The notes under the pieces are model-generated. The model saw nothing but the letters and a program-made list of their open reading frames with translations. It made no database searches and had not been told where the DNA came from. DNA of 64,000 nt from Octopus sinensis (lineage: Eukaryota), in assembly GCF_006345805.1 (NCBI RefSeq), contig NC_043014.1:44144001-44208000 (forward strand), read 5' to 3'. A program made the translations under genes and the position numbers. Each line of letters begins with the position of its first letter. Within the stretch, counting starts at the first letter, position 1. This document shows positions 2,426 to 59,818 of the stretch, piece by piece.

Positions 2426-3682
2426 ATGGCATCCAATCAGCAAGAGAACGATACGTACGTAGAATTGGTAGCGTATTTGGAAGAACAGAACGGTACACAC
2501 GAAGCATTAATGGTGTGTCCGGATGAAACTAGCCTTTTAGACGACGATGAGTGCGAATCAGCAACGGCGGATTCGGAAGAAAATAGCGACATATTCGAAT
2601 TGTTGATGGAAGATTCGGTAGAAGAGACCCACACATACGAAACAGTAATGGCAGATTCGGAAGAAAAGAGCGTTTTAGACGACGATGTCTGCGAATCAGC
2701 AACGGCGGATTTGGGAAAAAAGAGCCTTTTAGACAGTGAAGTATACGAACCATCAAATGCGGATTCGGAAGAAAATAGCCACATATACGGATCGTTGATG
2801 GTAGATTCGGTAGAAAAGACCCATACATATGAAACAGTAATGGCAAATTCGGAAGAAGAGAGTCATACCTACGAAAACTTAAGGGTGGATTCGAAAGAAG
2901 AGAGCCATACCTACGAAAAATTAAGGGCGGATTCGGAAGGAGAGAGCCATACCTACGAAGAAATAATGCCGGATTCGGAAGGAGATAGCCATATCTACGA
3001 AGAAATAATGCCGGATTCGGAAGGAGATAGCCATATCTACGAAACATTAAGGGCGGATTCAGAAGGAGAGAGCCTTTCCCTCGAAATAATAACTGATTCG
3101 GAAAAAACGGAAGAAACAGATGGCAATAATTCTGTAGACGATTCGACAAATGTTCCGATACTAACCACAGAAGAATCAAGGACAACACGTCGTTTGTCAC
3201 ATTCTTCTACTTCTAGCAACGCGGAAAACGAAGAAACGACCGCACTCGGACGATTTGGGCAACATCAAAATCAACATCACACGACCATCTCTTTTGATAT
3301 GCACTGGCTGTTTATACTTGCTTGTCTGGTGTCGAGTTCAGTCAATTTATCCTGCAGTTTTACATATCTGTTGCTACTGCTTCGCAAATATTCAATTGCA
3401 TCAGATTATTGGAGTGTTGTTCTGAACACGATTACGTTATTCAGCTCGTCCATAATCTTCTGCATCTTTTCCCCAATTTGGAAGCGAAAGTTAGTTTTTC
3501 CGAATAGAACTATCGGCTACAGTCTCATATATACGACCCTCAATCTCGTGTCTGCTGTCATTATCATCAATTTACGTTACACTCGGATCACCCTCGCCAT
3601 TTTTATAAGCAGTATCTTGCTGTCTGTCCTGTTATTTGTACAGAGAATCAGATTAAGATTTACAGCTTTAGAAAACCTGTAA
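2426..3682 (+). CDS. Tetraspan family paralogue G1 (418 aa): long acidic N-tail with 14-aa Tyr repeats, four C-terminal TM helices
   Basis: ATG-to-stop ORF. Four hydrophobic segments with the family motifs HWLFIL..SLSCS, WKRK..FPNR and LNLVSAVII. RRLS motif precedes TM1. Confidence 0.85.
   Translation: MASNQQENDTYVELVAYLEEQNGTHEALMVCPDETSLLDDDECESATADSEENSDIFELLMEDSVEETHTYETVMADSEEKSVLDDDVCESATADLGKKSLLDSEVYEPSNADSEENSHIYGSLMVDSVEKTHTYETVMANSEEESHTYENLRVDSKEESHTYEKLRADSEGESHTYEEIMPDSEGDSHIYEEIMPDSEGDSHIYETLRADSEGESLSLEIITDSEKTEETDGNNSVDDSTNVPILTTEESRTTRRLSHSSTSSNAENEETTALGRFGQHQNQHHTTISFDMHWLFILACLVSSSVNLSCSFTYLLLLLRKYSIASDYWSVVLNTITLFSSSIIFCIFSPIWKRKLVFPNRTIGYSLIYTTLNLVSAVIIINLRYTRITLAIFISSILLSVLLFVQRIRLRFTALENL
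2560..3100 (+). repeat. Coding 42-bp (14-aa) tandem repeat in G1
   Basis: Units such as GCGGATTCGGAAGGAGAGAGCCATACCTACGAAGAAATAATG. The Tyr codons at 2786 and 3038 are exactly 6x42 bp apart. Confidence 0.9.
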
Positions 3683-3844: not shown

Positions 3845-4250
3845 ATTCTTTCAGTTGTACTTTCAGTAGTTTTAACCCCTTTTCAATAGTTTTAACCCTT
3901 TTTCAATAGTTTTAACCCTTTTTTCAATAGTCTTAACCCTTTTGAGGAGTTTTAACTCTTTTCAAGAGTTTTAACCCTTTTCAATAGTTTTAACCCTTTT
4001 CAATAGTTTTAACCCCTTTCAGTAGTTTTAACCCCTTTCAGTAGTTTTAACCCCTTTCAGTAGTTTTAACCCCTTTCAGTAGTTTTAACCCTTTTCAATA
4101 GTTTTAACCCTTTTGAGTAGTTTTAACCCTTTTGATTAGTTTTAACCCTTTTTGAGTCGTTTTAACCCCTTTCAGTAGTTTTAACCTTTTTGAGTAGTTT
4201 TAACCCTTTTTCAATAGTTTTAACCTTTTTGAGTAGTTTTAACCCTTTCA
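3845..4250. repeat. ~20-bp minisatellite (AGTAGTTTTAACCCCTTTC-like), about 20 units
   Basis: Direct reading of tandem units. Confidence 0.9.
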
Positions 4251-8130: not shown

Positions 8131-8282
8131 AAGCCACAAGGGTCAAACACAGAGGAGACATACACACATGCGGGGACAAACAACACATGAAAAATGAATG
8201 AAAAACGGCTATCTCGGCCCCGCTCCGAGATGAAACCATGATTCCCCCCATCCTTTTTTTTTAGCTTTACTGTTTAACCAAA

Positions 8283-8465
8283 AAAGATTTTACATATTCT
8301 TTATTGCCCACAAGGGGTGAAACATAGAGGGGACAAACAAGGACAGACAAAGGGATTAAGTCGATTACATCGACCCCAGTACGTAACTGGTACTTATTTA
8401 ATCGACCCCGGAAGAATGAAAGGCAAAGTCGGCCTCGGCGAAATTTGAACTCAGAACGTAACAGC
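8283..8465 (-). mobile_element. SINE family A, partial
   Basis: Core and tail match the other family A copies. Confidence 0.8.
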
Positions 8466-10320
8466 AGCCCGGCAAGAAAGTCCTCGAGGGCTCTCCCACC
8501 ACCAGGAACGCCGTCATCCCCCGAACAGCTGGGCGGAGTACTCCCGAAAGGCCTCACACATTTTCTGGCCAGCGGAGACCACACCCGTTCACTATGTAGG
8601 AGAATCCAGAGGTGCCTCAACCTCAACGCATGTCTGCGCATTATTAACCAAGGCAGCCCTAAACCTCCCTTTAAAGTCTTTTGACAGCAGACAGAGCGTT
8701 TCACAAGTGGCAACCTGCCCTTCCACAAAAAGCAAAAGAGCTGTCTCTCCAGCCTGATCAACCACGAATCCGGACAGGGCACGACGGTTAGGCGGTAGGT
8801 AATGACCGATGCGATAAACACATTGGCCACCTCCTCCCTCCCTTTCAGGGATAGCCACCGCTAAGACCAGGTATTGACAACTGCAGCCACCCTGCTCAAT
8901 ACCTCCGTCCAATTTTTCTCTCTCTGGAGGCCTGGTCCAAACCAAACTCCCAGCAACTTAACCGGTCCCTCCATCCAGCGCCCAATAACGCTGTCTGAAG
9001 GCATCGATTTGCCAACCCAGGTGCCGAGCTACAAGCCGACCGACTTTTCCCGGTTGATCTTTGCTCCGGCCACCTCCTCGTAAGCCTCAATAGTCTTACC
9101 CACTTCACGTAGGCGTGCTACCGAGGTTACGCTGATAGTGATATCATCCGCGTAAGCCGTAACAAACTCCTCTAGACCTGGTTCTCTCGGGATGCTACTC
9201 AACTTTCGCAGTAGCGGCTCGAGAGCCATTACATACAGAAGTGGTGAAAGCGGACATCCTTGACGAACCGAGCGTCTGATGCAGAACGGCTTCGAAAGGA
9301 AACCGTTCACCCGAACTATCGAGTCAATGTTGTGGTACGAAGCCATAAACCACCTGAGGAAGCCAAGGCCCAGGCTGAACCGCGCAAGCACAGTCGCCAG
9401 GTATCGATGGTCAACCATATCAAAAGCTTTAGACTGATCTAAATGTACCAATGCCCCACCTTTGCCAGATTTATTACCAACCCTCTCTATGGTATAGCGA
9501 ATAAGATGGAGGGTATACTGAATGGTTCTGCCTGGGATGGCACATGTTTGTGCCTCCCCGACTATACCATTCACGACACGCGCCAACCTTTTTGCTAAGA
9601 CCTTGGCCAAAATCTTCACTTCTGCGATTAACAGAGTGATGGGCCTGAAATTCTCTATAACGTCTCTCTTGTCCGGGTCCTTTCTGACCAACGTCACTAC
9701 CCCCCGGCGCACAGATCTGGGGATAAGCCCATTCTGTTGCCAGTTCGCGTACACGTCAGCCAGTAGTTGCCCGAACAAGTCTGGCATACATTTATACAGC
9801 TCGTACAGAAGACCATCAAGTCCCGGTGACTTACCCGCTTTGCAGTCGGCCAAAGCCTCCATCACCTCCACAGACGTGATTGGCTCTTCGCAAAACTCCG
9901 CATCCGACTCCGAGAGACACGGCAGCCCAGCAAGAAAGTCCTCGAGGGCTCTCCCACCTCCAGGACCGCCGTCACCCCCAAACAGCTAGGCGAAGTACTC
10001 CCGAAAGGCCTCACACATTTTCTCGGATTCGTTTACTAAGACACCATTTTGATTCGCCAAAGATCGAATAGTGGAACTATTTCTTTGCCGAGCTTCCACC
10101 ACTCAAGCCCATCCAGCGGCCTTGATTCCTTCACTTCCCATTGCACATAACTTAGCTCTGGCAATACTTCCCATGTGTTGGGCTTCAAGATGCTGGTTTA
10201 ACTCCAGTCTTTTCACCCTCGTATGGTCCGCATTACCAGTCCTCCAGGCTTCTTCTAGTCCCTTAATTAGACCATCTTCTTTTCTACGTCCCTTCTTAGC
10301 TAAACTTATGCTAATGAGTC
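8465..10320 (-). mobile_element. L1/Tx1-like LINE ORF2 fragment (RT and flanks), rearranged
   Basis: RT motifs KSPGLDG, FRPITLL, LDQSKAFD, RQGCPLSPLLY and YADD. Post-RT segment WKGRLPLVKRSVC..GGLG. Confidence 0.9.
9029..9871 (-). pseudogene. Non-LTR reverse transcriptase domain (L1/Tx1-like)
   Basis: 280-aa open segment with canonical RT motifs including YADD. The flanking frames are disrupted. Confidence 0.9.
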
Positions 10321-22229: not shown

Positions 22230-22415
22230 CCTCACCCGGAGGAAGTGGAGGAGGAGGAGGAGGAGGAGGAAGTGGAGGAGGAGGAGGGGGAGGAAGTGGA
22301 GGAAGTGGAGGAAGTGGAGGAGGAGGAGGAGGAGGGGGAAGTGGAGGAGGAGGAGGAGGAGGAGGAAGTGGAGGAGGAGGAGGAGGAGGAGGGGAGAGTG
22401 GAGGAGGAGGAGGTT
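22230..22415. repeat. (GGA)n purine microsatellite
   Basis: GGAGGAGGA runs punctuated by AGT. Confidence 0.95.
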
Positions 22416-22805: not shown

Positions 22806-23270
22806 AAATGAAGTTTGATAGCTGACTTCTTATTACCCACAAGGGGCCAACAAAGAGGGGACAATACAATCTGATTTTGGGGTTAGATGAGCGAATGATT
22901 ATACAAAAAGATGACATTAAAATTTTTACAAAATTAAGAAAGTATAATGAAATCGAAATGAAGTTTGATAGCTGATTTTTTATTGCCCACAAGGGGCCAA
23001 AAAAAAGGGGACAATACAATTTGATTTTGGGGTCAGATGAGCGAATGATTATACAAAAAGATGACATTAAAATTTTTACAAAATTAAGAAAATATAATGA
23101 AATCGAAATGAAGTTTGATAGCTGATTTTTTATTGCCCACAAGGGGCCAACAAAGAGGGGACAATACAATCTGATTTTGGGGTCAGATGAGCGAATGATT
23201 ATACAAAAAGATGGCATTAAAATATTTACAAAATTAAGAAATATAATAAAATCGAAATGAAGTTTGATAG
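22806..23270 (-). repeat. Three tandem 150-bp units, each a LINE-type 3' tail plus a 16-bp host duplication
   Basis: Units start at 22806, 22956, 23106 and 23255 with AAATGAAGTTTGATAG. Each contains the reverse complement of the GCCCCTTGTGGG(T/C)AATAA tail. Confidence 0.85.
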
Positions 23271-23524
23271 CGTCGATTAAGAATTGAAACCGCACGCGCA
23301 TGCAAATAGCTGTTGATTGACCAAAAGAAAAAAATTGTTGGCATGATGGAATAGTTTATTTAAGGGCACTCTTTAAAATCGATGCAAGGTGTTTTCATAA
23401 TTTCTATTGTTTCCGAGACAATAAATACTAAATATGGTGAATTGATAAAAATTCAGAGAGAGGACATTTTTTTTTACGTTCGTTAGCTTCAAATCGACGA
23501 AAGAAGATTACATCTCAAGAAAGA

Positions 23525-29551: not shown

Positions 29552-31403
29552 CGCGCGCGTTTTTGTGTGTTCGTCCACTATCACCGCTTGGTAGCCGGTG
29601 TTGGTGTGTTTACGTCCCCGTAACTTAGCGGTTCGGCAAAAGCGTCCGATAGAGTAAATACCAGGCTTTAAAAAAAATTGGTTTTGGGGTCGATTTGTTC
29701 GGCTAAAACGCGGTGCCCCAGCATGGCCGCAATCAAATGACTGAAACAAGTAAAAGATATTGTATGTTAAATTACACAAAAATAATAACAAAAACACGTA
29801 GACTGTGCCTTATACCATTCTAGTTCGGTTTATGTAAACAATTGATTCAATTTTCGTAGCGAAAATTCAAAAATTCTAGGATTAGACTCTCAAATAAATT
29901 GCAATTTTCGTATCTCCTGCGCCACATAAACTCGCAGAGATACGAGTCAACCATAGAACGGTGAGTCACACAGCGTCGTTTATTCTCTCTTTTTACACCG
30001 GCTCATATGCTTGTTTTCATTTGTTGTGAGTTGTTACCATTTTTCGAGTTAATAAACTCAACGTTATGGTTCTTTGTCGAAACTTATAGCCATAAGTTTC
30101 AAGAATGTGAGAGTAGGCTCTCCACAAATCACTGAAAATTGTAGTTCCAGGAAGAGCCCACAGACGTATGCATTCTTCTAGTGTGTTGCGATTCCGACAT
30201 GGTACTACATAAGAAAAATGTGTCTGGTCTCGTGACACACTCCTCCAAAAACTCACGTTATGGTTCTTTGTCGAAACTTATAGCCATAAGTTTCAAGAAT
30301 GTGAGAGTAGGCTCTCCACAAATCACTGAAAATTGTAGTTCCAGGAAGAGCCCACAGACGTATGCATTCTTCTAGTGTGTTGCGATTCCGACATGGTACT
30401 ACATAAGAAAAATGTGTCTGGTCTCGTGACACACTCCTCCAAAAACTCACGTTATGGTTCTTTGTCGAAACTTATAGCCATAAGTTTCAAGAATGTGAGA
30501 GTAGGCTCTCCACAAATCACTGAAAATTGTAGTTCCAGGAAGAGCCCACAGACGTATGCATTCTTCTAGTGTGTTGCGATTCCGACATGGTACTACATAA
30601 GAAAAATGTGTCTGGTCTCGTGACACACTCCTCCAAAAACTCACGTTACGGTTCTTTGTCGAAACTTATAGCCATAAGTTTCAAGAATGTGAGAGTAGGC
30701 TCTCCACAAATCACTGAAAATTGTAGTTCCTTGAAGAACCCACAGACGTATGCATTCTTCTAGTGTGTTGCGATTCTGACATGGTACTACATAAGAAAAA
30801 TGTGTCTGGTCTCGTGACACACTCCTCCAAAAACTCACTGTTCAGGTAGCACCCTTCCTCGGTTGTATTTAAGTTTTGAGAAGATGTTCGTTTCTGAAAA
30901 AAAAAAAAAAGAAACACCCAGGTGAAATAGGCAAAAATGGGGTCGTACAAACGATCAGAAAATAAGCACTTGTCAAATGAAATATATTTCTTTATTTACC
31001 TATAAAAAGGTTTACATGGAGGGGTATTTACAAGGACAGACAAGGGACATGTAGGGTACAAACACGCTTCTTATATACAAGATGAAAAGACAGATGGATT
31101 TACATATACGGATGGGAGTTAACTTGTCAAAGGAAATAGGTAAAAATAATATATGTGCTTTTATTAGTTTAAGCAGATCATAATTTGGCTTGTTTCTATG
31201 GAAACAGGCACCGGTATGTATGTGGCTTTCAATTGGTTAAATTACTCAAAGCTTGCAAACTTTAAAAGCTATTAACGTTTTATGGCAATAATAAATTTCA
31301 TTTCCATAATTAGCATGTAAAACTACACCAGTACACCAAATATGAAAATAGTTTTAAACAAAATTTAGAAAATTTAAAACTGTGTTAGCAACAGAAAAGA
31401 TCC
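28839..31403 (-). mobile_element. Merlin transposon relic with nested SINE C (29233-29760) and a retroposed tail
   Basis: 16-bp inverted ends GATCTTTTCTGTTGCT / AGCAACAGAAAAGATC, with no clear TSD. Transposase remnants VVPCRNRNTLEECIRLWALPGTTIFSDLWRAY. Confidence 0.65.
30059..30838 (-). repeat. 194-bp unit x4 within the Merlin transposase remnant
   Basis: Identical ORF fragments recur with period 194 (ends at 30256, 30450, 30644, 30838). Confidence 0.9.
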
Positions 31404-41149: not shown

Positions 41150-42260
41150 GGAGCGATGTTGTCCCTTCTAGCATAGCTCTGGTCATTGGTTTAAGCTATC
41201 TTACCGCGAAAAGGGGGCATGCTATTTTTTTGATGGAAGCACTCCGTCGGTTACGACGACGAGGGTTCCGGTTGATCCGATCAACGGAACAGCCTGCTCG
41301 TGAAATTAATGTGTAAGTGGCTGAGCACTCCACAGACACGTGTACCCTTAACGCAGTTCTCGGGGATAATCAGCGTGACACAGAGAGTGACAAGGCCAGC
41401 CCTTTGAAATACAGGTACAACAGAAACAGGAAGTAAGAGTGAGAGAAAGTTGTGGTGAAAGAGTACAGCAGGGATCACCACCATCCCTGCCGGAGCCTCG
41501 TGGAGATTTAGGTGTTTTCGCTCAATAAACACTCACAACGCCCGGTCTGGGAATCGAAACCGCGATCCTACGACCGCGAGTCCGCTGCCCTAACCACTGG
41601 GCCATTGCGCCTCCACGGGCATGCTATTATGATAAAGAGGAACACAACTCATTCACTGTTTGTATTAAGTTGCAAGTATATGAATTGTTCGTATACTTCG
41701 TAGGGCTATTTCTATCAATTCTTACAGAATCGTCCATTAGTTTCTAAGGAAATAATCCTCCTTTGTTGATTTCAAACCAAATGACATGAAAATTTTCTGA
41801 ACCTTTAACCAGGTCTTGTAAATACTGGTTTCAAATTTTGGCACAAGGCCAGCAAGTTCAGAGAGGAGGGGGTAAGCCAATTATATTGGCCCCAGTACTC
41901 AACTGGCATTTATTTTATTTACCCCCGAAAGAATGAAAGGTAAAGTCGACCTCGGCTGAATTTGAACTCTGAACGTAAAGACGGACGAAATGTCGCTAAG
42001 CCTGTTGTCCGGCGTGCTAACGATTCTGCAAGTTCGCTGCCTTATGTTTTGTAAATATTCCAAGAAAGAATAGATGCGTGGTGAACAACAGCTTTCCTTA
42101 TTCAGCTTTTCGTTTTCATCTTAAATTAACTATTCCATTGTTTCCACTTTCCTGTTTTCATTTCTTTGGCCAAATTTGACAGGCAAGGAACTGACTAAAG
42201 TGTTACATGCATTTAAGACATTGGAATCAACTAAGCGGTTTCAATTCTTAGCTGACGTGA
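41150..42260 (-). pseudogene. Type-II remnant, split by SINE B (41245-41615) and SINE A (41825-42045)
   Basis: The minus strand has AAGAATTGAAACCGC (~42250), ATGGACGATTCTGTAAGAATTGAT (MDDSVRID) and GGTAAGATAGCTTAAACCAATGACCAGAGCTATGCT. Confidence 0.6.
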
Positions 42261-42477
42261 AATTTTGCTTAGGGCTTAGATGCCCTTAGATATCTATGAA
42301 CGGAATATTTTGTCAGTTTCTGTTTAAAAAAAAAAAATTAACCAAAAAAAAAGATCGTGATGGTCATTCATAAAGAATTAATATTGGATGTTTGAGACTA
42401 TCAGAGCGAAACGTCAACTTTTATACGTCAGTCGTGGAGCGTCTCATTAGCAAACAAAACCTGTCATTTCGAATGAA

Positions 42478-42605
42478 GACTTTCATTGCCGGACATTTCG
42501 ACCGAAGAATTTCATTACCGGACATTTCGAGCGAAGAATTTCATTACCGGACATTTCGAGCGAAGAATTTCATTACCGGACATTTCGAGTGAAGAATTTC
42601 ATTAT
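42478..42605. repeat. 29-bp minisatellite x4
   Basis: GAAGAATTTCATTACCGGACATTTCGAGC units. Confidence 0.9.
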
Positions 42606-42958: not shown

Positions 42959-44071
42959 TTAAACAGCTGAAAAATTCGTAACCAACCTCGGTGCACACAA
43001 CAGAATCAACAGTATGGCACTACCGATTAAAACGGACAGAATAATCCAGTCATAATGTATATAAATGATTATGCTAGCAGACAACACACTAAGTGTGGCA
43101 CATAGGATGCAGTGAGCATATCTTATTTTCGAGATACCTGGGGTTGGTTTCGAAAACGGATAGACGAAGCAGAGAACTGCCAACGAGTTGGCGCCAATAA
43201 CGGCGTGCAGAACAATTGTCCAGTACTCTGCAGTGTCTAGATTAGACTTTGCAAGCTGCACTAAACACATGATACTGGAATATAAACAAAATAACGACAG
43301 CAGTATGTAGCTGAACATCAAGAAACCGGGCAAACGATAATAAGTGGTAGTGTGTTGTTGGTTTTGTTGATGCTGCGGTTGTTGTTGTTCTTGTTGCTGT
43401 TGTTCTTGTTGTTGTTGTTGCTGTTGTTGAGATCCTCCCGGCGTGGTCGTTTCTAGGTTTTCATCGATGGAAGTTAGTGATAGGCGACGTGTTGTCCTCG
43501 ATTCATTCGATGGCCGTAGCAAATTGTCCATATTTATATAATTATTCCTAGCTTCATTTGATGTCTGTAGCGAACTGTCCATATCTAGATAATTACCCCT
43601 AGCTTCATTCGATGTCTGTAGCGAACTGTCCACAACTAGATAATTACCCCTCGCTTCATTCGATGTCCGTAACGAATTGTCCATATCTAGATAATCACTG
43701 CCCGATTCATTTGATGTCAGTCGCGAATTGTCCATATCTAGATAATCACTGCCCGATTCATTCGATCTCCGTAGCGAATTGTCCATAATTAGATAATTAC
43801 TCGTAGAACTATCTGCATAATTATCTTCATCATCCGTATAATTATCTTCATTATCTGCAGAACTACCTCCGTTGTCCACAAAACTACTTTCGTTGTCCAC
43901 AGAACTACCTTCGTTGTCCACAGAAATACCTTCGTTGTCCACAGAAATACCTTCGTTGTCCACAGAATTAACTGGATTAGTTCTTTCCGGGTTCTCCATT
44001 ATTTCTTCGTATATATTTTCCGTTTGCTGGTTTTCTTCGTATACATCGTCCATTTGCTGATTTGAAGCCAT
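42959..44071 (-). CDS. Tetraspan family paralogue G7 (370 aa from MASNQQ): 7-aa and 17-aa repeats with YxxM motifs, poly-Q, four TM segments
   Basis: The ATG at 44071 aligns with the G1 start. RTTRRLSL..ENLETT precedes TM1; YWTIVLHAVIGANSL and HCILCATLSVLSASII follow. Confidence 0.85.
   Translation of the reverse strand: MASNQQMDDVYEENQQTENIYEEIMENPERTNPVNSVDNEGISVDNEGISVDNEGSSVDNESSFVDNGGSSADNEDNYTDDEDNYADSSTSNYLIMDNSLRRSNESGSDYLDMDNSRLTSNESGSDYLDMDNSLRTSNEARGNYLVVDSSLQTSNEARGNYLDMDSSLQTSNEARNNYINMDNLLRPSNESRTTRRLSLTSIDENLETTTPGGSQQQQQQQQEQQQQEQQQPQHQQNQQHTTTYYRLPGFLMFSYILLSLFCLYSSIMCLVQLAKSNLDTAEYWTIVLHAVIGANSLAVLCFVYPFSKPTPGISKIRYAHCILCATLSVLSASIIIYIHYDWIILSVLIGSAILLILLCAPRLVTNFSAV
43500..43970 (-). 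repeat. Coding 51-bp (17-aa) and 21-bp (7-aa) tandem repeats in G7
   Basis: SNESGSDYLDMDNSRLT-type units (six Tyr) and SVDNEGI-type units. Confidence 0.9.
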
Positions 44072-44156: not shown

Positions 44157-45388
44157 TATTTCTTTATTACCCACTAGGGGCCACGAAGAGGGAACATTAC
44201 AAAACATGGGAGACACAAAACAATGCGATTAAAATTATGAATAAATGAATGTTAAAATGAAAAAATGATCACATGAAAGCGATGCTAACGGCCCCCTCCG
44301 CCAGCATCACTTACCTTTCCGTTTCCTATCACGATTCCAAAGTCTTTCACCTCACCTTTCATTTCTCTTTCATACCTCTCTATCATATCATCCTTCATAT
44401 ATGCTGAAAAACAATTTATACGTAGTTCATTACACTTGCTCATCAAAGAGCCCATAAGTTCAAAATCGAACACCGCATAGCTACCGTCTTCATACTCTTG
44501 CCATACATTGTCTTCAAAAAGCCTTCTTGCGTTCTCGGTATCCCCCTTCCTCACAACACATAAAAAGTAGGACTGGGGCTTTTGTATGTTCTGTGTGTCT
44601 GTTTTCGTTTTTCTTGTAGGCGGGGAGTGGGTGGTATTGCTGTTTGCAGGGGCAGGATGGGTCTCCAAGGGTGTGGGTGGTGTTGGGGTGGGTTGGGGCT
44701 TCGCACAGTTTTTCCTTTTCTTTCCTTTTCTCTTCTTTCTGCCCTCCTCACACTCTTTTTGCATCTCCTCCTCCTCTGTCGTTTCCCTTTCCGTCTGCTT
44801 CTCTTTAATTTCTTCCTCTTTTGGGGCCTCCTCTTTTGGAGCTTCCTCAACGATTTCCTTTTCTCTTGGTGGGGGAGGGCAGAAGGCTCTTATGTGGCCC
44901 CTCAGGCCACACTTGTAACAACGTGGAGCTCTGCCCTCCACCCACACTCTCATAATCACGTCTCCCAATTTAATGCTTTCCGCCAGGTCCACCAGCACCT
45001 CGTTCTCCGCCTGCACGTTCAGCTCCACTGTTACGCCTCTCCAGCCCTCGGTCTTGACCGAGGCATGGAGAATATCCACTTTCTCCTCGTGGCCGCTGAT
45101 CACAGCCGCCACAATCCACTCAGCCTCAACGTTTGGTGGCACTCCCTCCACCCTTACTCGTGTAATCCTTCTATTCAAGTACATTGATAAAAGTGTTACC
45201 TTTTCTGACTTCACTGTCTTCACCGCCATCTTCCTCGCTGCAGTCTCACTTTTAAAATGTACCACTACAGTACCGTGCTTCGATCCTCGAGTCAGAAAAA
45301 TGATTTCCTCCTCCGATCTTCTCAGGGCTTCCTCTATCCATTCCAAATTTACAACCTCTATTTTCTTTCTTTCGTTCGCGAACACCCT
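44157..45388 (-). mobile_element. ORF1-only element, subfamily A, copy 3 (5'-truncated) inside the G7 upstream block
   Basis: Closely similar to 1157-2388. The host block ...GATGGAATAGTTTATTTAAG lies immediately 5' of it. Confidence 0.85.
44285..45385 (-). CDS. ORF1p-like zinc-knuckle protein, 5'-truncated but otherwise open
   Basis: 366-aa open frame nearly identical to the ORF at 923-2260. Confidence 0.7.
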   Translation of the reverse strand: MFANERKKIEVVNLEWIEEALRRSEEEIIFLTRGSKHGTVVVHFKSETAARKMAVKTVKSEKVTLLSMYLNRRITRVRVEGVPPNVEAEWIVAAVISGHEEKVDILHASVKTEGWRGVTVELNVQAENEVLVDLAESIKLGDVIMRVWVEGRAPRCYKCGLRGHIRAFCPPPPREKEIVEEAPKEEAPKEEEIKEKQTERETTEEEEMQKECEEGRKKRKGKKRKNCAKPQPTPTPPTPLETHPAPANSNTTHSPPTRKTKTDTQNIQKPQSYFLCVVRKGDTENARRLFEDNVWQEYEDGSYAVFDFELMGSLMSKCNELRINCFSAYMKDDMIERYEREMKGEVKDFGIVIGNGKVSDAGGGGR

Positions 45389-45540
45389 TAATCTTAAATA
45401 AACTATTCCATCGTTTCGTCTTGGGTCTTTCTATTTTCTTTGGTCGATCAAAATTTCATGAATGCAGATCATTGTAAGCTACGAAACGGTTTCAATTCAT
45501 AGCTAACGTTATCAAATTGCTTCTAATGTCAATGTTTCTT

Positions 45541-47309: not shown

Positions 47310-48435
47310 GTAGAAGAGGAATTGAGACAGGTAAATTCATGTCCGGGCGCGGGTTGATTAGTTTTTTTCAACTATCACCTGAGGAGTAAGATCCGTCTGG
47401 AGAGGAAATTCCTGTCTCAAGGTATGTTCGGGAAAAGATGGACGCCTGTCGTAAGAATGATGCGAGAGGAAGGTGCCGAGCCGGTGTAGCCAGTCCGAAA
47501 GGGGGGGAAAAAAGGAAAAAAACAAAAGTGAAAAGAACCGGTCGATTGATTGGAACTCTAATCATTCGATTTCATATCAATTATATATTCTTATCGATTT
47601 CCGAATTTTATAAAATTTTTAAATTTCGCTTTATTTTTTGAATTTATACCGATTTAGAGAAGACTTTTGCGGATTCCATGGACAGCGAGGCTCACCAATG
47701 GAGAAGTTCTTAAGCAGATAAGGCCGAAAATGTCGCTAGAATCTGGGATCACCAAGCGTAGATTGGCACATTACGGTCATATTATGCGGAGAAAATCCCT
47801 GGAGAAGGACATCATGCTCGGAATGGTCAGTGGCAAGAGAGGAAGAGGCCGATCAAGAACCCGCTGGCTTGACACTATCAGGAGTGATACCGGAATGGAC
47901 ATGGCCAGTCTGAAGGAAGCGGCCCAGGATAGAACTGACTGGAAGACACTGATCCACGGTCATATTATGCGGAGAGAATCCCTGGAGAAGGACATCATGC
48001 TCAGAATGGTCAGTGGCAAGAGAGGAAGAGGCCGACCAAGAACCCGCTGGCTTGACACCATCAGGAGAGATAACGGAATGGACATGACCAATCTGAAGGA
48101 AGCGGCCCAGGATAGAACTGACTGGAGGACACTGATCCATGGAGTAACCGAGAGTCGACTTCGACTGAGCGGATAGAGAGAGATTGTAACATCGTTTTAT
48201 GTTGTGATGTCCTTGTTCGTCCCCTTCTATATAAGTCCTCAATAGACAAATAAAGAAAATGTTACTTTTTTACTATCATTTTCAGATATTATTCATATTA
48301 TCATATTTTAATTTGTTCTTCATGTGCATTTTCATGTTCATTCATTATATCATATTTTATTTTTTAATTGTTATATGTCCCCACATGTGTTGTAGTGTCC
48401 CCTCTGTATATTGCCTTTATGGCAAATTTAATAAA
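47310..48435 (+). mobile_element. Tx1-like LINE 3' remnant interrupted by an RTE element
   Basis: 47330-47470 translates RLERKFLSQGMFGKRW, homologous to 40510-40600. LINE-type tails resume at 48190-48435. Confidence 0.6.
47660..48185 (+). mobile_element. RTE-clade LINE 3' end with a 183-bp in-frame tandem duplication
   Basis: RIPWTARLTNGEVL..YGHIMRR.SLEKDIMLGMVSGKRGRGRPRTRWLDTI is a typical RTE ORF C-terminus. Confidence 0.85.
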
Positions 48436-48702: not shown

Positions 48703-49254
48703 CGAGCGATTACTGTTTCAATCTCACTCTGAGATTTAATTATGCTTAATAAAATAATGTTACTCTTTTACTAAGCCATAAAACATGACATGAAATGTTT
48801 CCAGTCTTGAAATTGAAACCAGGAGGTGTTTGCCGCTTGTCACGACTTTGCCTTTTGCTCTGCAACTCTCAAAAACATTTATAATATTGATTCTTGTGCC
48901 TAAGAACACAGACTTTATTAAGAAAGGGAAAGTGAGAGGATGTAGTGTTTATATATTTCAAACGGCATCTTGAAGCGTAAGTGAAGTTTGATATCGTCAA
49001 CAAAGAACTGAAACCGTATCGTGGATTTGAATGATTTGCATGCAAGAAATTTTGATTAATTAATGAAAATAAAAAAGATGAAAGTCGAAACTGATGGAAG
49101 AGTTTATTTAAGGTCACTTTTTTTTTTAATACAAGGCGAAATACAGTTGCATTTTAATCGTTTCTTCAGCAATAAATCCTAAACATGATGAAGTGTTGCT
49201 ATTTCGGAGAGAGGAAATTTTTCATGTAAGTTGGCTTCAAATCGGCAAAAGAAT

Positions 49255-50196
49255 ATGTCCCAAGAAATAATGGAGGGTTCAGAAAGAATAGAAGACTTTG
49301 AAAGAACAGATGATTCCGAAAGACTAGACGGTTCTGAACGGCTAGAAGGCGCTGAACGGCTGGAAGGTGCTGAACGGCTAGAAGACGCTGAGCGACTGGA
49401 AGGCGCTGAGCGACTGGAAGGCGCTGAGCGGCTGGAAGGCGGTGAACGGCTAGAAGGCGGTGAACGGCTAGAAGGCGGTGAACGGCTAGAAGGCGGTGAA
49501 CGGTTAGAAGACGCTGAACGGTTAGAAGACGCTGAACGGTTAGAAGACGCTGAACGGCTAGAAGGCGCTGAACTACTAGATTATTATGAAAGAATGGGAT
49601 ATTTTGGAACAATGGTGGATTCTGAAACAACTGATGGAGATGACCCTATGGATATTTTGAGCTTTGATCCAACTCGGAACCATATAATAATATACCCAGG
49701 GGATAGGAGGCCAATACGTCGTTCGTCATTTTCTTCCTATCTCGGTAGTGAGGAAAACATAGAAATGACTGCGCCAGGAGAATCTCCACAAAACCAACAA
49801 CAAAATAACAAGTATTCTAATCTCCACTGGCTCTATATAGTCGGTTATTTAGTGTTGGGTTTGGTCTGTCTATCCTGTGGCATTGTATATCTGTTGCAAA
49901 TCGTTCGCAATTTTAAAAATATGACTGAGATTTGGAGTTTTATTCTCGACATAGTTATATTGTGCAACTCGTTGGCAATCCTCTTCATTGTTTTCCCGGC
50001 TTCCAAGCGAAGAACGGTTTTCCCAAATCGCTCTCTTGTCCACTGTCTCCTATGTACTTTATTCAACCTGGTGTCTTCAACCATAATCTTCTATTATCAT
50101 TACGATTGGATAATGTCGGTTGTTCTTGTCAGTAGTATCATACTTTTGGTTCTGTTTACTCTACCGGGCACAAGATCGAATTTTACAGTGCTTTAA
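49255..50196 (+). CDS. Tetraspan family paralogue G8 (313 aa from the first ATG; frame open from 49231) with ERLEG(A/G) hexapeptide repeats
   Basis: RPIRRSSF..EENIEMTAPG, LHWLYIV, CNSLAIL, KRRTVFPNRSLVHCLLCTLFNLVSSTII. Confidence 0.85.
   Translation: MSQEIMEGSERIEDFERTDDSERLDGSERLEGAERLEGAERLEDAERLEGAERLEGAERLEGGERLEGGERLEGGERLEGGERLEDAERLEDAERLEDAERLEGAELLDYYERMGYFGTMVDSETTDGDDPMDILSFDPTRNHIIIYPGDRRPIRRSSFSSYLGSEENIEMTAPGESPQNQQQNNKYSNLHWLYIVGYLVLGLVCLSCGIVYLLQIVRNFKNMTEIWSFILDIVILCNSLAILFIVFPASKRRTVFPNRSLVHCLLCTLFNLVSSTIIFYYHYDWIMSVVLVSSIILLVLFTLPGTRSNFTVL
49300..49575 (+). repeat. Coding 18-bp tandem repeat (about 15 units) in G8
   Basis: GAACGGCTAGAAGGCGCT-type units. Confidence 0.92.
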
Positions 50197-53969: not shown

Positions 53970-55560
53970 TTATTACTACCCACAAGGGGCGAACATAGAG
54001 GGGACAATACAATCGAGGAACTTAAAATAAGAAAGCGAAATGACAAGAAAAGGAAAAAAATAAAAGTAAAAAATGACATATGAAAGAATATTTACAATGA
54101 GATGTAAATGCCCACTCGATCCCCGAAATCGAGAGGTTACATTTTCGTCACATATATTTCACAATATTTTCTTTTTTCTCTTCTTTCTTCTCTCTCTTCT
54201 CACAATTTTATACGTATTCCATAATACCTTTCAAGTCTCTAAAGTCAATCACTGAGCCCTCAGGCAGCCGCTCTTTCATTCGAACACCCGTGTAAAAAAT
54301 TACACTCTCTCCGGCAGCTCTGAGGAACTCAGCGACTCTTTCTTCGGGGATCAGAGCAGTCTCCTGCCACTGATCAGTCATCCTGTTGACCCACACATGT
54401 CCCTCCGTACTACATGTCAATTCCTTCATTTCAGGGCTGAAATGGAAGGTTATTAACTTGTAGTAATCTTGTTTCCGTCCTACGTTTTCCCTCGTTTTTC
54501 TTTTCGGGCTTATTTCTTCCTTGTTCTCCTCTCTTTGTTTCTCTCTTTCTCTCTTTTTGCTTTCTTTTCTTTCTTCTTCCTTCTCTTGTTTTTTTCCTGT
54601 TGTTTCTTTTTCCTTTTTCTTTTCCTGACTCTGTTTTGGTTCTATTTCTTTCTTTTCTTTTATTTCTTTTTCTTTCGTTGACTTATTATTTCCTTTCTCT
54701 TGTTGTTTTGTCTCCTTTTCTATGTTTTCTTTTTCATTTACCGTATTCTTCCTTTCTTCAAGTTCCTGCTCGTACTCCGCTATGAATTCGTATAGCGGGC
54801 ACTCTTTTTTAATGTGCCCCCTTGTCCCGCACAAGTAGCAGTTTGGCTTTCTTCCCTCTGCAATTACACTGAGGGTTTTCTCGTCTTCGATTTCTATTCT
54901 GTAGGGGAACCTTTCAATGTCTCTTTTGTGGCCATCAAACACAGTTCTACCCCATATCCTCTCCAGTTTACTGCGTTGGACTCCTTAAAGGATTCCACCT
55001 CCACTTCCTCTTCTGCTGCTCCAGAATAGCTGTTGCCAGCCACTCTGTTTTTATTTCTGGGGGTATATTCGGGATTTTAACCCGGACCCTCTTCTTCCCT
55101 TGTATGAGGGCCACATTGTAAAATTTTCGGCTCTTAGTACAGTGGAAGCCAGTGAGGCTGCAATTTCTTCCGTTGCACATCTCACCTCCACCGTACCAAA
55201 TTTCTTGCCTCTACTCACATAGGTCGATTTTTGCATTATGTCTCCCAGACATTTTTCAATTTCGGCTATCTCCACTCTAGCCAGCTTCTTCGTATTTTTG
55301 TCTTGGGTTCTATACGTCACTGTCTTGCTTTCCTTGTCCTCTTTTGCTTTCGCGGGGGGGATTAGCTTCACGCTATCACCCTCCCTTCTGAAGAGCTTTT
55401 CATATTCTTTGAGTTTACTCTTCTCAAAGAAAACATCCTTCACGATTATCGACGAATCATTTTTTTTTCCCGTGACCCCCGCGTAAGTCGCCATGACTAG
55501 AGGGTCAATTCACCTTCTTCGGAAGGTTTCCACACGTAGAGGCAAACGCCTCGCGCGATA
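53970..55560 (-). mobile_element. ORF1-only element, diverged subfamily C, frameshifted
   Basis: Three overlapping frames (55051-55494, 54968-55180, 54208-54942) rebuild an ORF1 with TYAGV, RGKKFGTVEV, RVKIPNIPP and CYLCGTRGHIKKECP. A ~240-bp UTR and the GCCCCTTGTGGGTAGTAATAA tail follow. Confidence 0.75.
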
Positions 55561-58902: not shown

Positions 58903-59496
58903 TTACGAAACTTGGACAGCTAAAAAATTCGATATCAACCTCGGTATACACAACAGGATCAAAAGCATGATACTAATGATAAGGACGGCGATTGTAATCC
59001 AGTCATTCCGCAAACCGAAAACGATGGAAGCCGACACCAGATTACAAAAGGTACAGAAGAGACACAAGACGAGTCGGCGATTTGGTAAAATTGCTCTGCG
59101 TCTGGAAAACGGGATAACGATGCAGAAGATTATCAGCGAACAGACGCCTATAACCAGGTCTAAAGCGACACTCAGATACGAAAATATGTCATCTGGAACG
59201 TGGTGGAATACTTTCAGTATATGTACGATGCTGCAAGATAAACTCAACACAGACAACACCAGGTAATTAAGCAGATAGAACCAGTGAGTCCCGATAATGG
59301 TATTTCGCTGTGGGTTCGGATCTTGATCGTTGTGTTGACCTCTTAACGCCGTCATTTCTATGTTTTCCTCATTGTTGATGAATGACAGACGACGTGGCCT
59401 CTCATTCGCTGTTGGTGATAAATTGTTCACGCTTGGTTCACTGTTCAAATTCTCCATTGGGTTATTTTCTTCAGAATCGTTTCTCTCAAGAGACAT
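58903..59496 (-). CDS. Tetraspan family paralogue G9 (197 aa from MSLERNDSE)
   Basis: RPRRLSF..EENIEMTALRG, THWFYLL..LSLSCSI, RRRAILPNRRL, FCNLVSASIV. The start was chosen by alignment to the paralogues. Confidence 0.83.
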   Translation of the reverse strand: MSLERNDSEENNPMENLNSEPSVNNLSPTANERPRRLSFINNEENIEMTALRGQHNDQDPNPQRNTIIGTHWFYLLNYLVLSVLSLSCSIVHILKVFHHVPDDIFSYLSVALDLVIGVCSLIIFCIVIPFSRRRAILPNRRLVLCLFCTFCNLVSASIVFGLRNDWITIAVLIISIMLLILLCIPRLISNFLAVQVS

Positions 59497-59818
59497 ACTT
59501 CTTTTGTCAACTCTAGACCAACTTACACGAAAAAAATGAAATTGCCTCAGTCCGAAATCTGTTGATACTGTTCTGGCATCGTTTTGCATATATCCCCTCA
59601 AAAAACAATGGAAATTATGCAAATACTCACATGACCTTTTCTTTCTTTTTTTCTTGTTCAAAAAAGTTATATGAAATGAACTCCTCCGCCGTTTCACCTT
59701 TCGTATTATTAGTATTTTCTTTAGTCGTCCACAAATCCCTGCATGCAGGTAATTCTAATCTGCGACGCGGGTTCAATTCTTGGTGGAAACCATCAAACAT
59801 CGCGAAGTATTTTAACAC

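What the first reader, a model, noticed from the sequence alone, without database searches (positions are those of the whole stretch)
43500..44071. G7 independently expanded a different motif: tandem YxxM (PI3K p85-type) sites
Seen in sequence: a 17-aa repeat gives YLIM, YLDM, YLDM, YLVV, YLDM and YINM, with ENIYEEI near the start, 7-aa acidic repeats and poly-Q. The repeat unit is unrelated to that of G1. Established knowledge: YxxM is the class IA PI3K p85 SH2 docking motif (IRS-1-like arrays) and YIN fits Grb2. Inference: paralogues wire one membrane module to different signalling outputs, like paired immune receptors.
Basis: partly seen in the sequence, partly recalled or inferred. Interest (0 to 1): 0.78.

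Follow-up and report, generated by a model that had tools for sequence, protein, structure and literature searches.

The report
Young tyrosine-motif repeats in octopus membrane protein
A fast-evolving octopus-specific four-pass membrane protein recently lengthened its floppy cytoplasmic tail by in-frame DNA repeats that copy a tyrosine motif six times, but its closest relative in another octopus has neither the repeats nor the motif, so a dedicated PI3K-signalling role is unproven and more likely incidental.

Summary
G7 is an intact single-exon ORF on the minus strand (42959-44071, 370 aa). It has a 51-bp x6 array giving YLIM/YLDM/YLDM/YLVV/YLDM/YINM, a 21-bp x5-7 acidic array, a duplicated YEE unit and a poly-Q run.

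G7 is one of nine intact paralogues of a family found only in octopods, with no Pfam, PDB or Foldseek relative. Each has a variable acidic tail, a conserved RRxS box, an E-M box and four TM helices. The tail is predicted cytosolic and disordered, so phosphotyrosine docking is physically possible.

The evidence does not support selection for YxxM:
- The six motifs are one founder unit amplified.
- Units diverge at pN/pS about 1.2.
- The youngest unit pair differs by two replacements, both inside the motif, one of them removing the Met.
- Tail tyrosines are not conserved across the family.
- The sister gene in Octopus bimaculoides (bootstrap 91) has a short tail with no repeat, Tyr or Met.
- A 1.2-kb LINE-like insertion now separates G7's ATG from the family's conserved TATA-like promoter element.

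Best reading: recent growth by slippage or unequal crossing-over of a weakly constrained disordered tail. PI3K/Grb2 docking remains a minority hypothesis, roughly 0.15-0.2.

The parts
42959..44071 (-). G7 coding sequence (370 codons plus stop), a single exon, starting at the ATG that reads MASNQQ
   Evidence: This is the only open frame of the six: 0 internal stops, against 16-32 in the other five frames. ORF listing. It is one of nine intact family copies in the window.
44002..44063 (-). 30-bp x 2.1 duplication giving DDVYEEN and ENIYEEI. It lies in an N-terminal extension (aa 1-24) that is 5'UTR in short-tailed paralogues and in the O. bimaculoides sister gene.
   Evidence: TRF. IYEEIM matches the G1 repeat unit at 19/20 nt. 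The O. bimaculoides sister has TTT instead of ATG and an in-frame stop just upstream. Upstream alignment.
43817..43963 (-). 21-bp (7-aa) acidic array: VDNEGIS-type units x5, then degenerate ADNEDNY and TDDEDNY
   Evidence: TRF reports 21 bp x 5.2, 93% matches, at 43858-43967. Translation.
43496..43801 (-). 51-bp (17-aa) x6 array carrying YLIM, YLDM, YLDM, YLVV, YLDM and YINM
   Evidence: TRF. Unit table and pN/pS = 1.19. The last unit is homologous to the single-copy pre-RRLS segment of G2, G4, G5 and the O. bimaculoides sister gene.
43478..43501 (-). Family-conserved basic box SRTTRRLS (RRxS, a PKA-type basophilic kinase consensus)
   Evidence: Conserved in window paralogues and in Octopus and Argonauta homologues.
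43448..43468 (-). Degenerate copy of the family's acidic E-M box. G7 reads IDENLET where the family consensus is NEENIEMT, so the Met is lost.
   Evidence: Alignments; homologues.
43353..43429 (-). Poly-Q / Q-rich run, an expansion of the family's QQNQ linker. It is modelled as a short helix.
   Evidence: TRF period 3/24. Alignment. AF2 helix at aa 217-229.
42962..43345 (-). Four-helix transmembrane module (TM helices at aa 243-275, 280-307, 315-338 and 342-369)
   Evidence: Hydropathy. AF2 pLDDT 86-89. Family-wide charge bias places loop 2 and both termini in the cytosol. dN/dS is about 0.5 against the O. bimaculoides sister.
44157..45388 (-). 5'-truncated LINE-like ORF1/gag (CCHC) retroelement copy in the same orientation as G7, inserted about 5 bp downstream of the TATA-like box
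   Evidence: 96% identical to 1157-2388 and to 1-908. Junctions, 23 ATGs and an AATAAA 97 nt before the G7 ATG. Its 3' tail is shared with SINE copies, 17 hits in the window. Weak zf-CCHC match.
45392..45524 (-). Family-conserved upstream element, probably the core promoter. It includes TGGAATAGTTTATTTAAG at 45392-45410 and is now 1.3 kb from the G7 ATG.
   Evidence: Homologous to the upstream regions of G3, G5 and G8 and of the Logan and O. bimaculoides loci. The motif lies 118-213 bp (element end to ATG) upstream of the start codon in G2, G4, G5, G6 and G8.

Best explanation
G7 is an intact, single-exon member of an octopod-restricted, otherwise unrelated family of small four-pass membrane proteins. 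Nine tandem paralogues lie in this window.

The conserved parts of the family are the 4-TM module, a juxtamembrane RRxS box and an acidic E-M box. The N-terminal tail in front of them is cytosolic, intrinsically disordered, acidic and hypervariable.

In the lineage of this genome, G7's tail grew by about 166 residues. An upstream ATG was gained, turning 5'UTR into coding sequence (MASNQQ...YEEIM). Four in-frame tandem duplications followed (30 bp x2, 21 bp x5-7, 51 bp x6, and a CAA/CAG run), through replication slippage or unequal crossing-over.

The 51-bp array amplifies the segment that is single-copy just before the RRLS box in relatives. Its founder unit happened to read Y-(L/I)-x-M, so six motif copies represent one event.

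Selection has kept the reading frame and the hydrophilic, acidic character of the tail, but no constraint on the unit sequence or on the Y/M positions was detectable in this small sample. The YxxM array is therefore most likely a young, lineage-specific by-product of repeat growth in a tolerant disordered tail, not an established PI3K docking device.

Shown: the anatomy, the family, the origin of the repeats, the lack of conservation and the retroelement insertion. Inferred: cytosolic topology, the slippage mechanism, the promoter identity and the absence of motif-level selection.
For: Coding and family membership:
- Only one of six frames is open.
- All nine paralogues are intact.
- Family dN/dS is 0.4-0.5.
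- Homologues occur only in O. bimaculoides, O. sinensis, Argonauta hians and unnamed Logan samples.
- All repeat periods inside family coding sequences are multiples of 3 (42, 54, 42, 51, 21, 30, 24, 18), unlike most non-coding arrays in the window.

Tail properties:
- AF2 models aa 1-216 without secondary structure, with 10-residue-block mean pLDDT of about 43-59.
- Loop 2 carries 78 K/R against 16 D/E, while loops 1 and 3 are net acidic, which implies an N-in topology.

Lack of constraint on the motif:
- Pooled pN/pS among units is 1.19. Units 4 and 5, the youngest pair, differ by two replacements, both inside YxxM (D to V and M to V).
- Tail Tyr counts are 0-2 in most of the 31 family members, with no positional conservation.

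Orthologue evidence:
- L004:14707 of O. bimaculoides groups with G7 (bootstrap 91).
- It has a 204-aa product with no repeats, no Tyr or Met at the homologous positions, no upstream ATG and an uninterrupted promoter.

Hypervariable tails elsewhere in the family:
- Two Logan contigs of the G8 orthologue differ by 0.8% in sequence but by 30 bp in the acidic repeat.
- The G9-like gene is 303 aa in O. bimaculoides and 377 codons in O. sinensis, through repeat number.
- The G1 orthologue in O. bimaculoides has one YEEL unit instead of an array.
Against: - Tyr-bearing units look over-represented among the family's expanded arrays: G1, G7 and the Argonauta P0016 PPxYESDE unit, about 3 of 6 arrays seen. 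The chance per random founder unit is roughly 0.06-0.1. This is a post-hoc estimate, P about 0.01-0.02.
- All ten tail tyrosines of G7 sit in acidic contexts typical of tyrosine-kinase substrates.
- The IYEE(I/L)M unit is shared at nucleotide level by G7, G1 and the O. bimaculoides G1 orthologue (19/20 and 22/24 nt). That could reflect selection on this Tyr motif. It could equally reflect constraint on the Kozak context of the ancestral start codon that directly follows it.
- The pN/pS test on six 51-bp units has low power, and lineage-specific function does not require conservation.
Confidence: 0.5

Rival explanations
1. G7 is a membrane-anchored phosphotyrosine scaffold. A Src-family kinase docks on or phosphorylates the N-terminal YEEI, then phosphorylates the evenly spaced (17-aa) acidic Y-L/I-x-M sites. 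These recruit the tandem SH2 domains of the class IA PI3K regulatory subunit, and Grb2 through YINM. G1 would couple the same 4-TM module to YEEI/YExx(L/V)-binding SH2 proteins.
For: - Five exact YxxM motifs, one also YxN, plus YEEI.
- The tail is predicted cytosolic and disordered.
- Every Tyr has acidic residues upstream.
- Tyr-bearing units may be enriched among the family's arrays.
- The YEE(I/L)M unit is shared between G7, G1 and the O. bimaculoides G1 orthologue.
- Multiple YXXM motifs are the accepted requirement for p85 binding to adaptors (PMC4738311; general SH2 specificity is established knowledge).
Against: - The array, the Tyr and the Met are all absent from the O. bimaculoides sister gene.
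- pN/pS is about 1.2 among units, and the youngest unit pair lost the Met.
- There is no family-wide Tyr conservation.
- G8's array and the O. bimaculoides/O. sinensis G9-like arrays lack a Tyr motif, apart from two DGYIPE units in the O. bimaculoides array.
- No expression or phosphorylation data exist.
- A retroelement with 23 ATGs and an AATAAA sits between the conserved promoter element and the G7 ATG.
Confidence: 0.18
2. The tyrosines act as YxxPhi sorting signals for clathrin adaptor mu-subunits. Together with the acidic clusters, they control endocytosis or lysosomal/TGN trafficking of the 4-TM protein. Both the G1 units (YEEI, YETV, YENL, YEKL, YETL) and all six G7 units, including YLVV, fit Yxx[ILMV].
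For: - Yxx[ILMV] is the only pattern common to every unit of both arrays, and it explains YLVV where YxxM does not.
- The tail is cytosolic and rich in acidic and Ser/Thr residues.
Against: - Established knowledge: functional YxxPhi signals usually lie close to the membrane, often 6-10 residues away for lysosomal targeting, and occur once or twice. Here they are 65-150 residues from TM1 and repeated.
- The same lack of conservation applies as for the SH2 model.
- Short-tailed paralogues manage with no such motif.
Confidence: 0.08
3. G7 is a recently silenced or decaying gene. The LINE-like insertion uncoupled it from its promoter, and the still-open frame only reflects how recent the event is. 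This is compatible with the best explanation for how the array arose.
For: - The insertion lies about 5 bp after the TATA-like box that sits 118-213 bp upstream of the ATG in five other paralogues.
- The resulting leader would be 1324 nt with 23 ATGs and a poly(A) signal 97 nt before the G7 ATG.
- G7 has the most divergent module in the cluster, at 33-43% identity. It has lost the family's KRRxxFPNR loop and the Met of the E-M box.
- Retroelement copies are only 4% diverged, so an intact ORF is weak evidence of present function.
- A frameshifted family pseudogene exists in O. sinensis at L003:5141-5760.
Against: - The 370-codon ORF is intact, including more than 500 bp of indel-prone repeats.
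- Module dN/dS against the O. bimaculoides sister is about 0.5, like other family members.
- G1 carries the same kind of insertion and is also intact.
- The element could supply a promoter or be spliced out.
- The promoter assignment is itself inferred.
Confidence: 0.2

Closest known systems
Multi-YxxM docking proteins for class IA PI3K (IRS-1/chico, Gab, CD19, CD28-type YMNM, PDGFR kinase-insert YMDM/YVPM)
   Same: - Several Y-x-x-M motifs in an acidic, disordered, cytosolic segment.
- One motif, YINM, doubles as a Grb2-type YxN, as in CD28.
- Spacing is compatible with tandem SH2 engagement.
   Different: - No PH, PTB or kinase domain.
- The motifs arise from one 51-bp unit amplified recently.
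- They are not conserved in the sister gene of another Octopus species.
- No evidence of phosphorylation or binding.
Transmembrane adaptor proteins (LAT, PAG/Cbp, NTAL, LAX)
   Same: A minimal or absent ectodomain, a membrane anchor and a long disordered cytosolic tail studded with Tyr motifs.
   Different: - Those are single-pass proteins with C-terminal tails and juxtamembrane palmitoylation motifs.
- G7 is four-pass with an N-terminal tail.
- There is no sequence relationship.
MS4A family (CD20, FcepsilonRI beta)
   Same: - Small 4-TM proteins with both termini cytosolic.
- Tandem gene clusters and fast evolution.
- One member, FcepsilonRI beta, carries a Tyr signalling motif in a cytosolic tail.
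   Different: - No member matched Pfam's CD20-like family or any other Pfam family above threshold.
- No PDB sequence hit.
- No CD20 or MS4A structure among the Foldseek matches, whose best E-value was 0.18 on generic helical bundles.
In-frame minisatellite expansion of short linear motifs in disordered protein regions (general phenomenon)
   Same: - Periods are multiples of 3.
- Edge units are the most diverged.
- Copy number differs between species and between near-identical samples.
   Different: Here several paralogues of one orphan membrane family each amplified a different piece of the same ancestral short tail. Two of the three arrays in this window carry Tyr motifs.

Membership tests
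Class IA PI3K (p85 SH2) docking scaffold | Y-x-x-M consensus present, preferably two or more copies | tested here: met
   Five exact YxxM (aa 93, 110, 127, 161, 178) plus one YLVV.
Class IA PI3K (p85 SH2) docking scaffold | Motifs exposed to the cytosol in an accessible segment | tested here: met
   This is a prediction only. The family-wide positive-inside bias puts the N-terminus in the cytosol. AF2 models the tail as disordered.
Class IA PI3K (p85 SH2) docking scaffold | Tyr and Met+3 maintained by selection in orthologues and among units | tested here: not met
   The O. bimaculoides sister gene has no repeat, Tyr or Met at the homologous site. pN/pS among units is 1.19, and the Met is lost in the youngest pair.
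Class IA PI3K (p85 SH2) docking scaffold | Tyrosines phosphorylated in vivo and bound by p85 SH2 domains | not testable with these tools
   Needs phosphoproteomics or pull-downs. No expression data were obtainable, because the Logan contigs are genomic.
Octopod 4-TM tail-variable family (unnamed; e.g. XP_014789313, XP_036366638, Argonauta hians GAB16032xx) | Four TM helices with the family's sequence profile | tested here: met
   G7 aligns over the whole module. The profile retrieves 22 representatives, all the named ones octopod. AF2 gives four helices at pLDDT 86-89.
Octopod 4-TM tail-variable family (unnamed; e.g. XP_014789313, XP_036366638, Argonauta hians GAB16032xx) | RRxS box followed by an acidic (E/D)-x-(I/L)-E-M box upstream of TM1 | tested here: inconclusive
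   The RRLS box is intact. The E-M box is degenerate in G7 (ENLET, Met replaced by Thr).
Octopod 4-TM tail-variable family (unnamed; e.g. XP_014789313, XP_036366638, Argonauta hians GAB16032xx) | Single-exon coding sequence in a tandem cluster with a conserved TATA-like upstream element | tested here: met
   Nine clustered single-ORF copies. The element is present at 45392-45410 but displaced by a retroelement.
MS4A / CD20-like | Match to the CD20-like Pfam family, or structural similarity to CD20 | tested here: not met
   No Pfam hit in any of 31 members. No PDB sequence hit. No CD20 among the Foldseek matches.
YxxPhi adaptor-complex sorting signal | Yxx[LIMVF] in the cytosolic tail, close to the membrane | tested here: inconclusive
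   The pattern is present in all six units, but 65-150 residues from TM1. Binding is not testable here.

The most novel reading that the evidence does not exclude
An octopod-specific orphan 4-TM family acts as a set of membrane adaptors whose signalling output is rewired by de novo birth and tandem amplification of phosphotyrosine motifs. G1 would carry Src-type YEEI arrays. G7 would carry a Src-priming YEEI plus a PI3K/Grb2-type YxxM array. This would be signalling scaffolds caught at the moment of origin, within one genus-level time span.
Probability: 0.13. Interest if true: 0.72.

Novelty: new variant of a known kind. Interest (0 to 1): 0.3.

Why it matters
If the array were functional, it would be a rare, datable example of a new PI3K/SH2 docking scaffold created by minisatellite growth in an invertebrate lineage-specific membrane protein. 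It would also give a handle on an uncharacterised octopod gene family.

As the evidence stands, the value is more modest:
- It documents an unannotated, Pfam-less, fast-evolving 4-TM family clustered in octopod genomes.
- The conserved features of that family are an RRxS box and an E-M box, and its tails are hotspots of in-frame repeat turnover.
- It shows that motif-level reading of repeat arrays overstates the evidence, because six motifs here equal one event.

Tried and rejected
Searches that found nothing:
- Whole-G7 and G7-module searches of the 5.8-billion protein index found nothing, not even a self hit. Only the profile search found relatives.
- Pfam on 31 members gave only sub-threshold noise.
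- PDB sequence searches and Foldseek against PDB gave no specific relative.
- Rfam and tRNA scans of the window gave nothing.
- Literature searches for octopus plus YxxM, and for the RefSeq/UniProt accessions, gave no papers. A broad search on cephalopod gene-family expansions gave nothing on this family.

Ideas considered and dropped:
- Logan contigs as expression evidence. They contain the upstream promoter element and are colinear with intergenic DNA, so they are genomic.
- Tyrosine sulfation of an extracellular acidic tail. Considered because of the DYLDMD and EDNY contexts, but the family-wide charge bias predicts an N-in topology.
- An exon structure that removes the tail. There is no support, since the ORFs are continuous in all copies and species.
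- The L003:5141-5760 pseudogene as the O. sinensis orthologue of G7. Rejected because it is only 64% identical in nucleotides to the O. bimaculoides G7-like locus, and its residues are not G7-like.
- Recent gene conversion as the source of G7's 5' end from G1. Unresolved: the retroelements are 96% identical, but the flanks down to the ATG are only about 70-80% identical.
Full report
**What is at the coordinates.** The finding lies on the minus strand. An ORF runs from the ATG at 44071 to the stop at 42959-42961 (370 codons). It is the only open frame of the six, with 0 internal stops against 16-32 in the others.

Tandem Repeats Finder reports four arrays inside it:
- 30 bp x 2.1 at 44002-44063
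- 21 bp x 5.2 at 43858-43967
- 51 bp x 6.0 at 43495-43802 (85% matches, score 392)
- a period-3/24 CAA/CAG run at 43353-43429

The 51-bp units encode SNYLIMDNSLRRSNESG, SDYLDMDNSRLTSNESG, SDYLDMDNSLRTSNEAR, GNYLVVDSSLQTSNEAR, GNYLDMDSSLQTSNEAR and NNYINMDNLLRPSNESR.

Five YxxM against 0.41 expected in residue shuffles gives P = 5e-6. That figure only restates that the segment is a tandem repeat. For a single founder unit drawn from non-repeat tail composition, P(YxxM) is about 0.008, and P(any common SH2 or sorting Tyr motif) is about 0.06.

**The gene family.** The window holds exactly nine paralogues, all intact:
- plus strand: G1 2426, G2 10707, G3 19724, G4 23525, G5 25357, G6 33063, G8 49231
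- minus strand: G7 44071, G9 about 59400-59538

They share a basic box (S-R-P-T-R-R-L-S), an acidic box (S-N-E-E-N-I-E-M-T), a Q-rich linker and a four-helix hydrophobic module. The segment N-terminal to the basic box is variable.

No member matches any Pfam family above threshold. No PDB sequence matches the profile.

An exhaustive profile search of 1.84 billion representative proteins found 22 relatives. Every one that carries a name is an uncharacterised or hypothetical protein of Octopus bimaculoides, O. sinensis or Argonauta hians. The rest come from unnamed Logan assemblies. I therefore infer that the window is from an octopod. It is not one of those three species, because orthologue identities are only 43-69%.

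Family dN/dS is about 0.4-0.5 in both the module and the alignable tail. These are real genes under weak constraint.

**Topology and structure.** Hydropathy gives four TM segments. Across 31 family members, the TM2-TM3 loop carries 78 K/R against 16 D/E. Loops 1 and 3 are net acidic. By the positive-inside rule, both termini, and hence the tail, are cytosolic.

AlphaFold2 with the 31-sequence alignment models four helices (aa 243-275, 280-307, 315-338, 342-369) at pLDDT 86-89. Residues 1-216 have no secondary structure, with 10-residue-block mean pLDDT of about 43-59. Foldseek against PDB gives nothing better than E = 0.18, on fragments of generic helical bundles.

The tail is therefore physically available to cytosolic kinases and SH2 domains.

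**Where the repeats came from.** The last 17-aa unit plus its flank (NNYINMDNLLRPSNESRTTRRLS) aligns without gaps to the single-copy segment before the basic box in G5 (NNGSDMSNLPGTSNASRPTHRLS). It also resembles that of G2 (VDYVNNDPSRGNLIQPSNPSRPTRRQS). The 51-bp array is thus an amplification of an ancestral tail segment.

G1's 42-bp array amplifies a different piece, containing IYEEIM. However, G7 also keeps G1's unit: ATATATACGAAGAAATAATG matches G1's repeat at 19/20 nt and is itself duplicated once.

The first 24 codons of G7 (MASNQQ...YEEI) are homologous to the 5'UTR of the short-tailed paralogues. G7 and G1 have an ATG where the others have TTA or TTG.

Every array inside family coding sequence has a period divisible by three (42, 54, 42, 51, 21, 30, 24, 18). 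Most non-coding arrays in the window do not. The expansions therefore happened under selection for an open frame.

**Tests for selection on the motif.**
- Among the six units, pooled pS is 0.150 and pN is 0.179, a ratio of 1.19.
- The Tyr codon is invariant, but so are the neighbouring SNE and D codons, in an array where about 65% of nucleotide columns are invariant.
- The most similar pair (units 4 and 5) differs by two replacements, both inside the motif (YLDM against YLVV), one of which removes the Met.
- Across the family, most tails contain 0-2 tyrosines with no positional conservation.
- On the other side, three of roughly six expanded arrays seen in the family carry Tyr in the unit: G1, G7 and Argonauta P0016 with PPxYESDE x2. 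This is more than the 0.06-0.1 per-unit expectation. It is a post-hoc, weak signal, and I record it as evidence against my preferred reading.

**Orthologue evidence.** The 20.7-kb O. bimaculoides locus around XP_014789313 (L004) contains five family members. In a neighbour-joining tree of the alignable columns, L004:14707 is sister to G7 with 91% bootstrap. L004:4463 groups with G1 at 89%.

The G7 sister encodes 204 aa. Its tail reads MENPERTNEDSVNDVNNDPSTGNLLRTSNDPSPTRRLS, with no repeats. It has Asp/Val where G7 has Tyr and Asn/Thr where G7 has Met. At the MASNQQ position it has TTT instead of ATG, with an in-frame stop just upstream.

The G1 orthologue has a single NIYEELM and no array. All of G7's extra 166 residues are therefore lineage-specific.

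Rapid repeat turnover is general in the family:
- The G9-like gene is 303 aa in O. bimaculoides and 377 codons in O. sinensis.
- The G8 orthologue has far fewer ER-type units than G8.
- Two Logan contigs of that gene differ by 12 mismatches in 1.47 kb but by 30 bp in the acidic repeat.

**Promoter context.** A conserved upstream block ends in TGGAATAGTTTATTTAAGG, a TATA-like box. It lies 118-213 bp (element end to ATG) upstream of the start codon in G2, G4, G5, G6 and G8, and also in the Logan and O. bimaculoides loci.

For G7 it is at 45392-45410, 1.3 kb from the ATG. A 5'-truncated retroelement copy (44157-45388) is inserted about 5 bp after the box, in the same orientation as G7. The element encodes an ORF1/gag-like CCHC protein. 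It is 96% identical to copies at 1157-2388 and 1-908, and its 3' tail is shared with the abundant SINE.

A transcript from the old promoter would carry a 1324-nt leader with 23 ATGs and an AATAAA 97 nt before the G7 ATG. G1 has the same element 38 bp upstream of its ATG. The O. bimaculoides orthologues of both genes have uninterrupted promoters.

The element copies differ by 4%, while repeat units differ by about 15% at synonymous sites. I infer that the arrays predate the insertion, and that the intact ORF says little about present expression.

I found no expression evidence. The Logan contigs are genomic.

**Interpretation.** What is shown:
- a real, intact gene of an orphan octopod 4-TM family
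- a cytosolic (predicted), disordered acidic tail
- four recent in-frame tandem expansions, one of which multiplies a Y-(L/I)-x-M unit
- no conservation of that unit or its key residues in the sister gene
- near-neutral divergence among units
- a retroelement between the conserved promoter element and the ATG

What I infer as most likely (about 0.5): the array is a by-product of slippage or unequal crossing-over in a tail where only frame and hydrophilic, acidic character are constrained. The conserved, probably functional tail elements are the RRxS (PKA-type consensus) and E-M boxes.

It has an attractive internal logic: a YEEI priming site followed by evenly spaced acidic YxxM sites. A YxxPhi trafficking role (about 0.08) is the only pattern that fits every unit of both G1 and G7, but the distance from the membrane argues against it. 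Recent silencing (about 0.2) is compatible with the main reading.

**Comparison with known systems.** Functionally, the closest analogues are multi-YxxM docking proteins and transmembrane adaptor proteins. Architecturally, the closest is the MS4A family (4-TM, cytosolic termini, clustered genes).

Membership in MS4A was tested and not met. The motif and accessibility criteria for a PI3K docking site are met, the conservation criterion is not, and the biochemical criteria cannot be tested here.

I found no literature on the family. I rate it a new variant of a known kind, namely a repeat-generated linear-motif array on an orphan membrane module. Interest is modest until expression and phosphorylation are shown.

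Noticed in passing
window 1-908, 1157-2388 (+) and 44157-45388 (-): Three 96%-identical copies of a LINE-like ORF1/gag (CCHC) element. Two lie directly upstream of G1 and G7, 38 and 86 bp from the ATG, in the same orientation as the gene. The O. bimaculoides orthologues lack them. This may be insertion preference for the AT-rich promoter, or possible co-transcription.
   Followed up: partly
window, 17 sites (e.g. 6183, 7512, 45540, 60212): The element's 3' tail GCCCCTAGTGGGTAATAAAGAAATA is shared with the abundant ~184-bp SINE-like repeat. This suggests a LINE/SINE partnership. No tRNA or Rfam match was found for the SINE.
   Followed up: partly
window 10532, 23347, 25126, 32905, 49095 (+); 45392 and 42119 (-): A conserved TATA-like promoter element, TGGAATAGTTTATTTAAGG, lies upstream of family members. 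The copy at 42119-42137 (-) is an orphan with no family ORF downstream and is followed by a SINE. It is probably the remnant of a lost paralogue.
   Followed up: partly
window 49231-50196 (+), G8; L005/L006: G8's MASNRQ codon is TTG rather than ATG, while its Logan orthologue has ATG. G8 therefore probably starts at the downstream MSQEIM. Its 18-bp x13 ERLEGA array has no Tyr. The orthologue shows a 30-bp repeat-length difference between two samples that differ by only 0.8%.
   Followed up: partly
window 2426-3682 (+), G1; L004:4463: G1's 42/54-bp arrays multiply an xHxYExx(I/L/V) unit about ten times. The O. bimaculoides orthologue has one NIYEELM, and a Logan orthologue (P0007) has NLDEDEM with no Tyr.
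   Followed up: partly
all family members (alignments A1, A2, A4): The RRxS box and the (E/D)x(I/L)EM box 20-50 residues before TM1 are the only tail features conserved from Octopus to Argonauta. The RRxS box is a likely basophilic-kinase (PKA-type) regulatory site. G7 has lost the Met of the E-M box.
   Followed up: no
P0016, P0014 (Argonauta hians): Some Argonauta homologues carry PPxY-type motifs (PPPYESDE, APPYESDE, PPPEY) in the tail. That would suggest WW-domain or Nedd4-type ligase binding rather than SH2 docking.
   Followed up: no
L003:5141-5760 (O. sinensis): A frameshifted, stop-containing family pseudogene sits next to XP_036366638, indicating birth-and-death evolution of the cluster. 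The RefSeq model of XP_036366638 omits 33 bp of a continuous genomic ORF inside its repeat.
   Followed up: partly
window 8267-9871 (-), 47667-48176 (+), 54208-54942 (-): A reverse-transcriptase ORF fragment, an internally duplicated (183 bp x2) retroelement-tail ORF and a second, distantly related CCHC gag-like ORF. Together with many TA/TG microsatellites, they show a retroelement-rich intergenic landscape.
   Followed up: no
window 42465-42604, 3861-4248, 22238-22413, 30054-30838: Non-coding arrays: 29 bp x4.8 just downstream of the G7 stop, 19 bp x20 downstream of G1, (GGA)x58, and 194 bp x4. The 150-bp x3 array at 22806-23271 creates a spurious 165-aa ORF.
   Followed up: no
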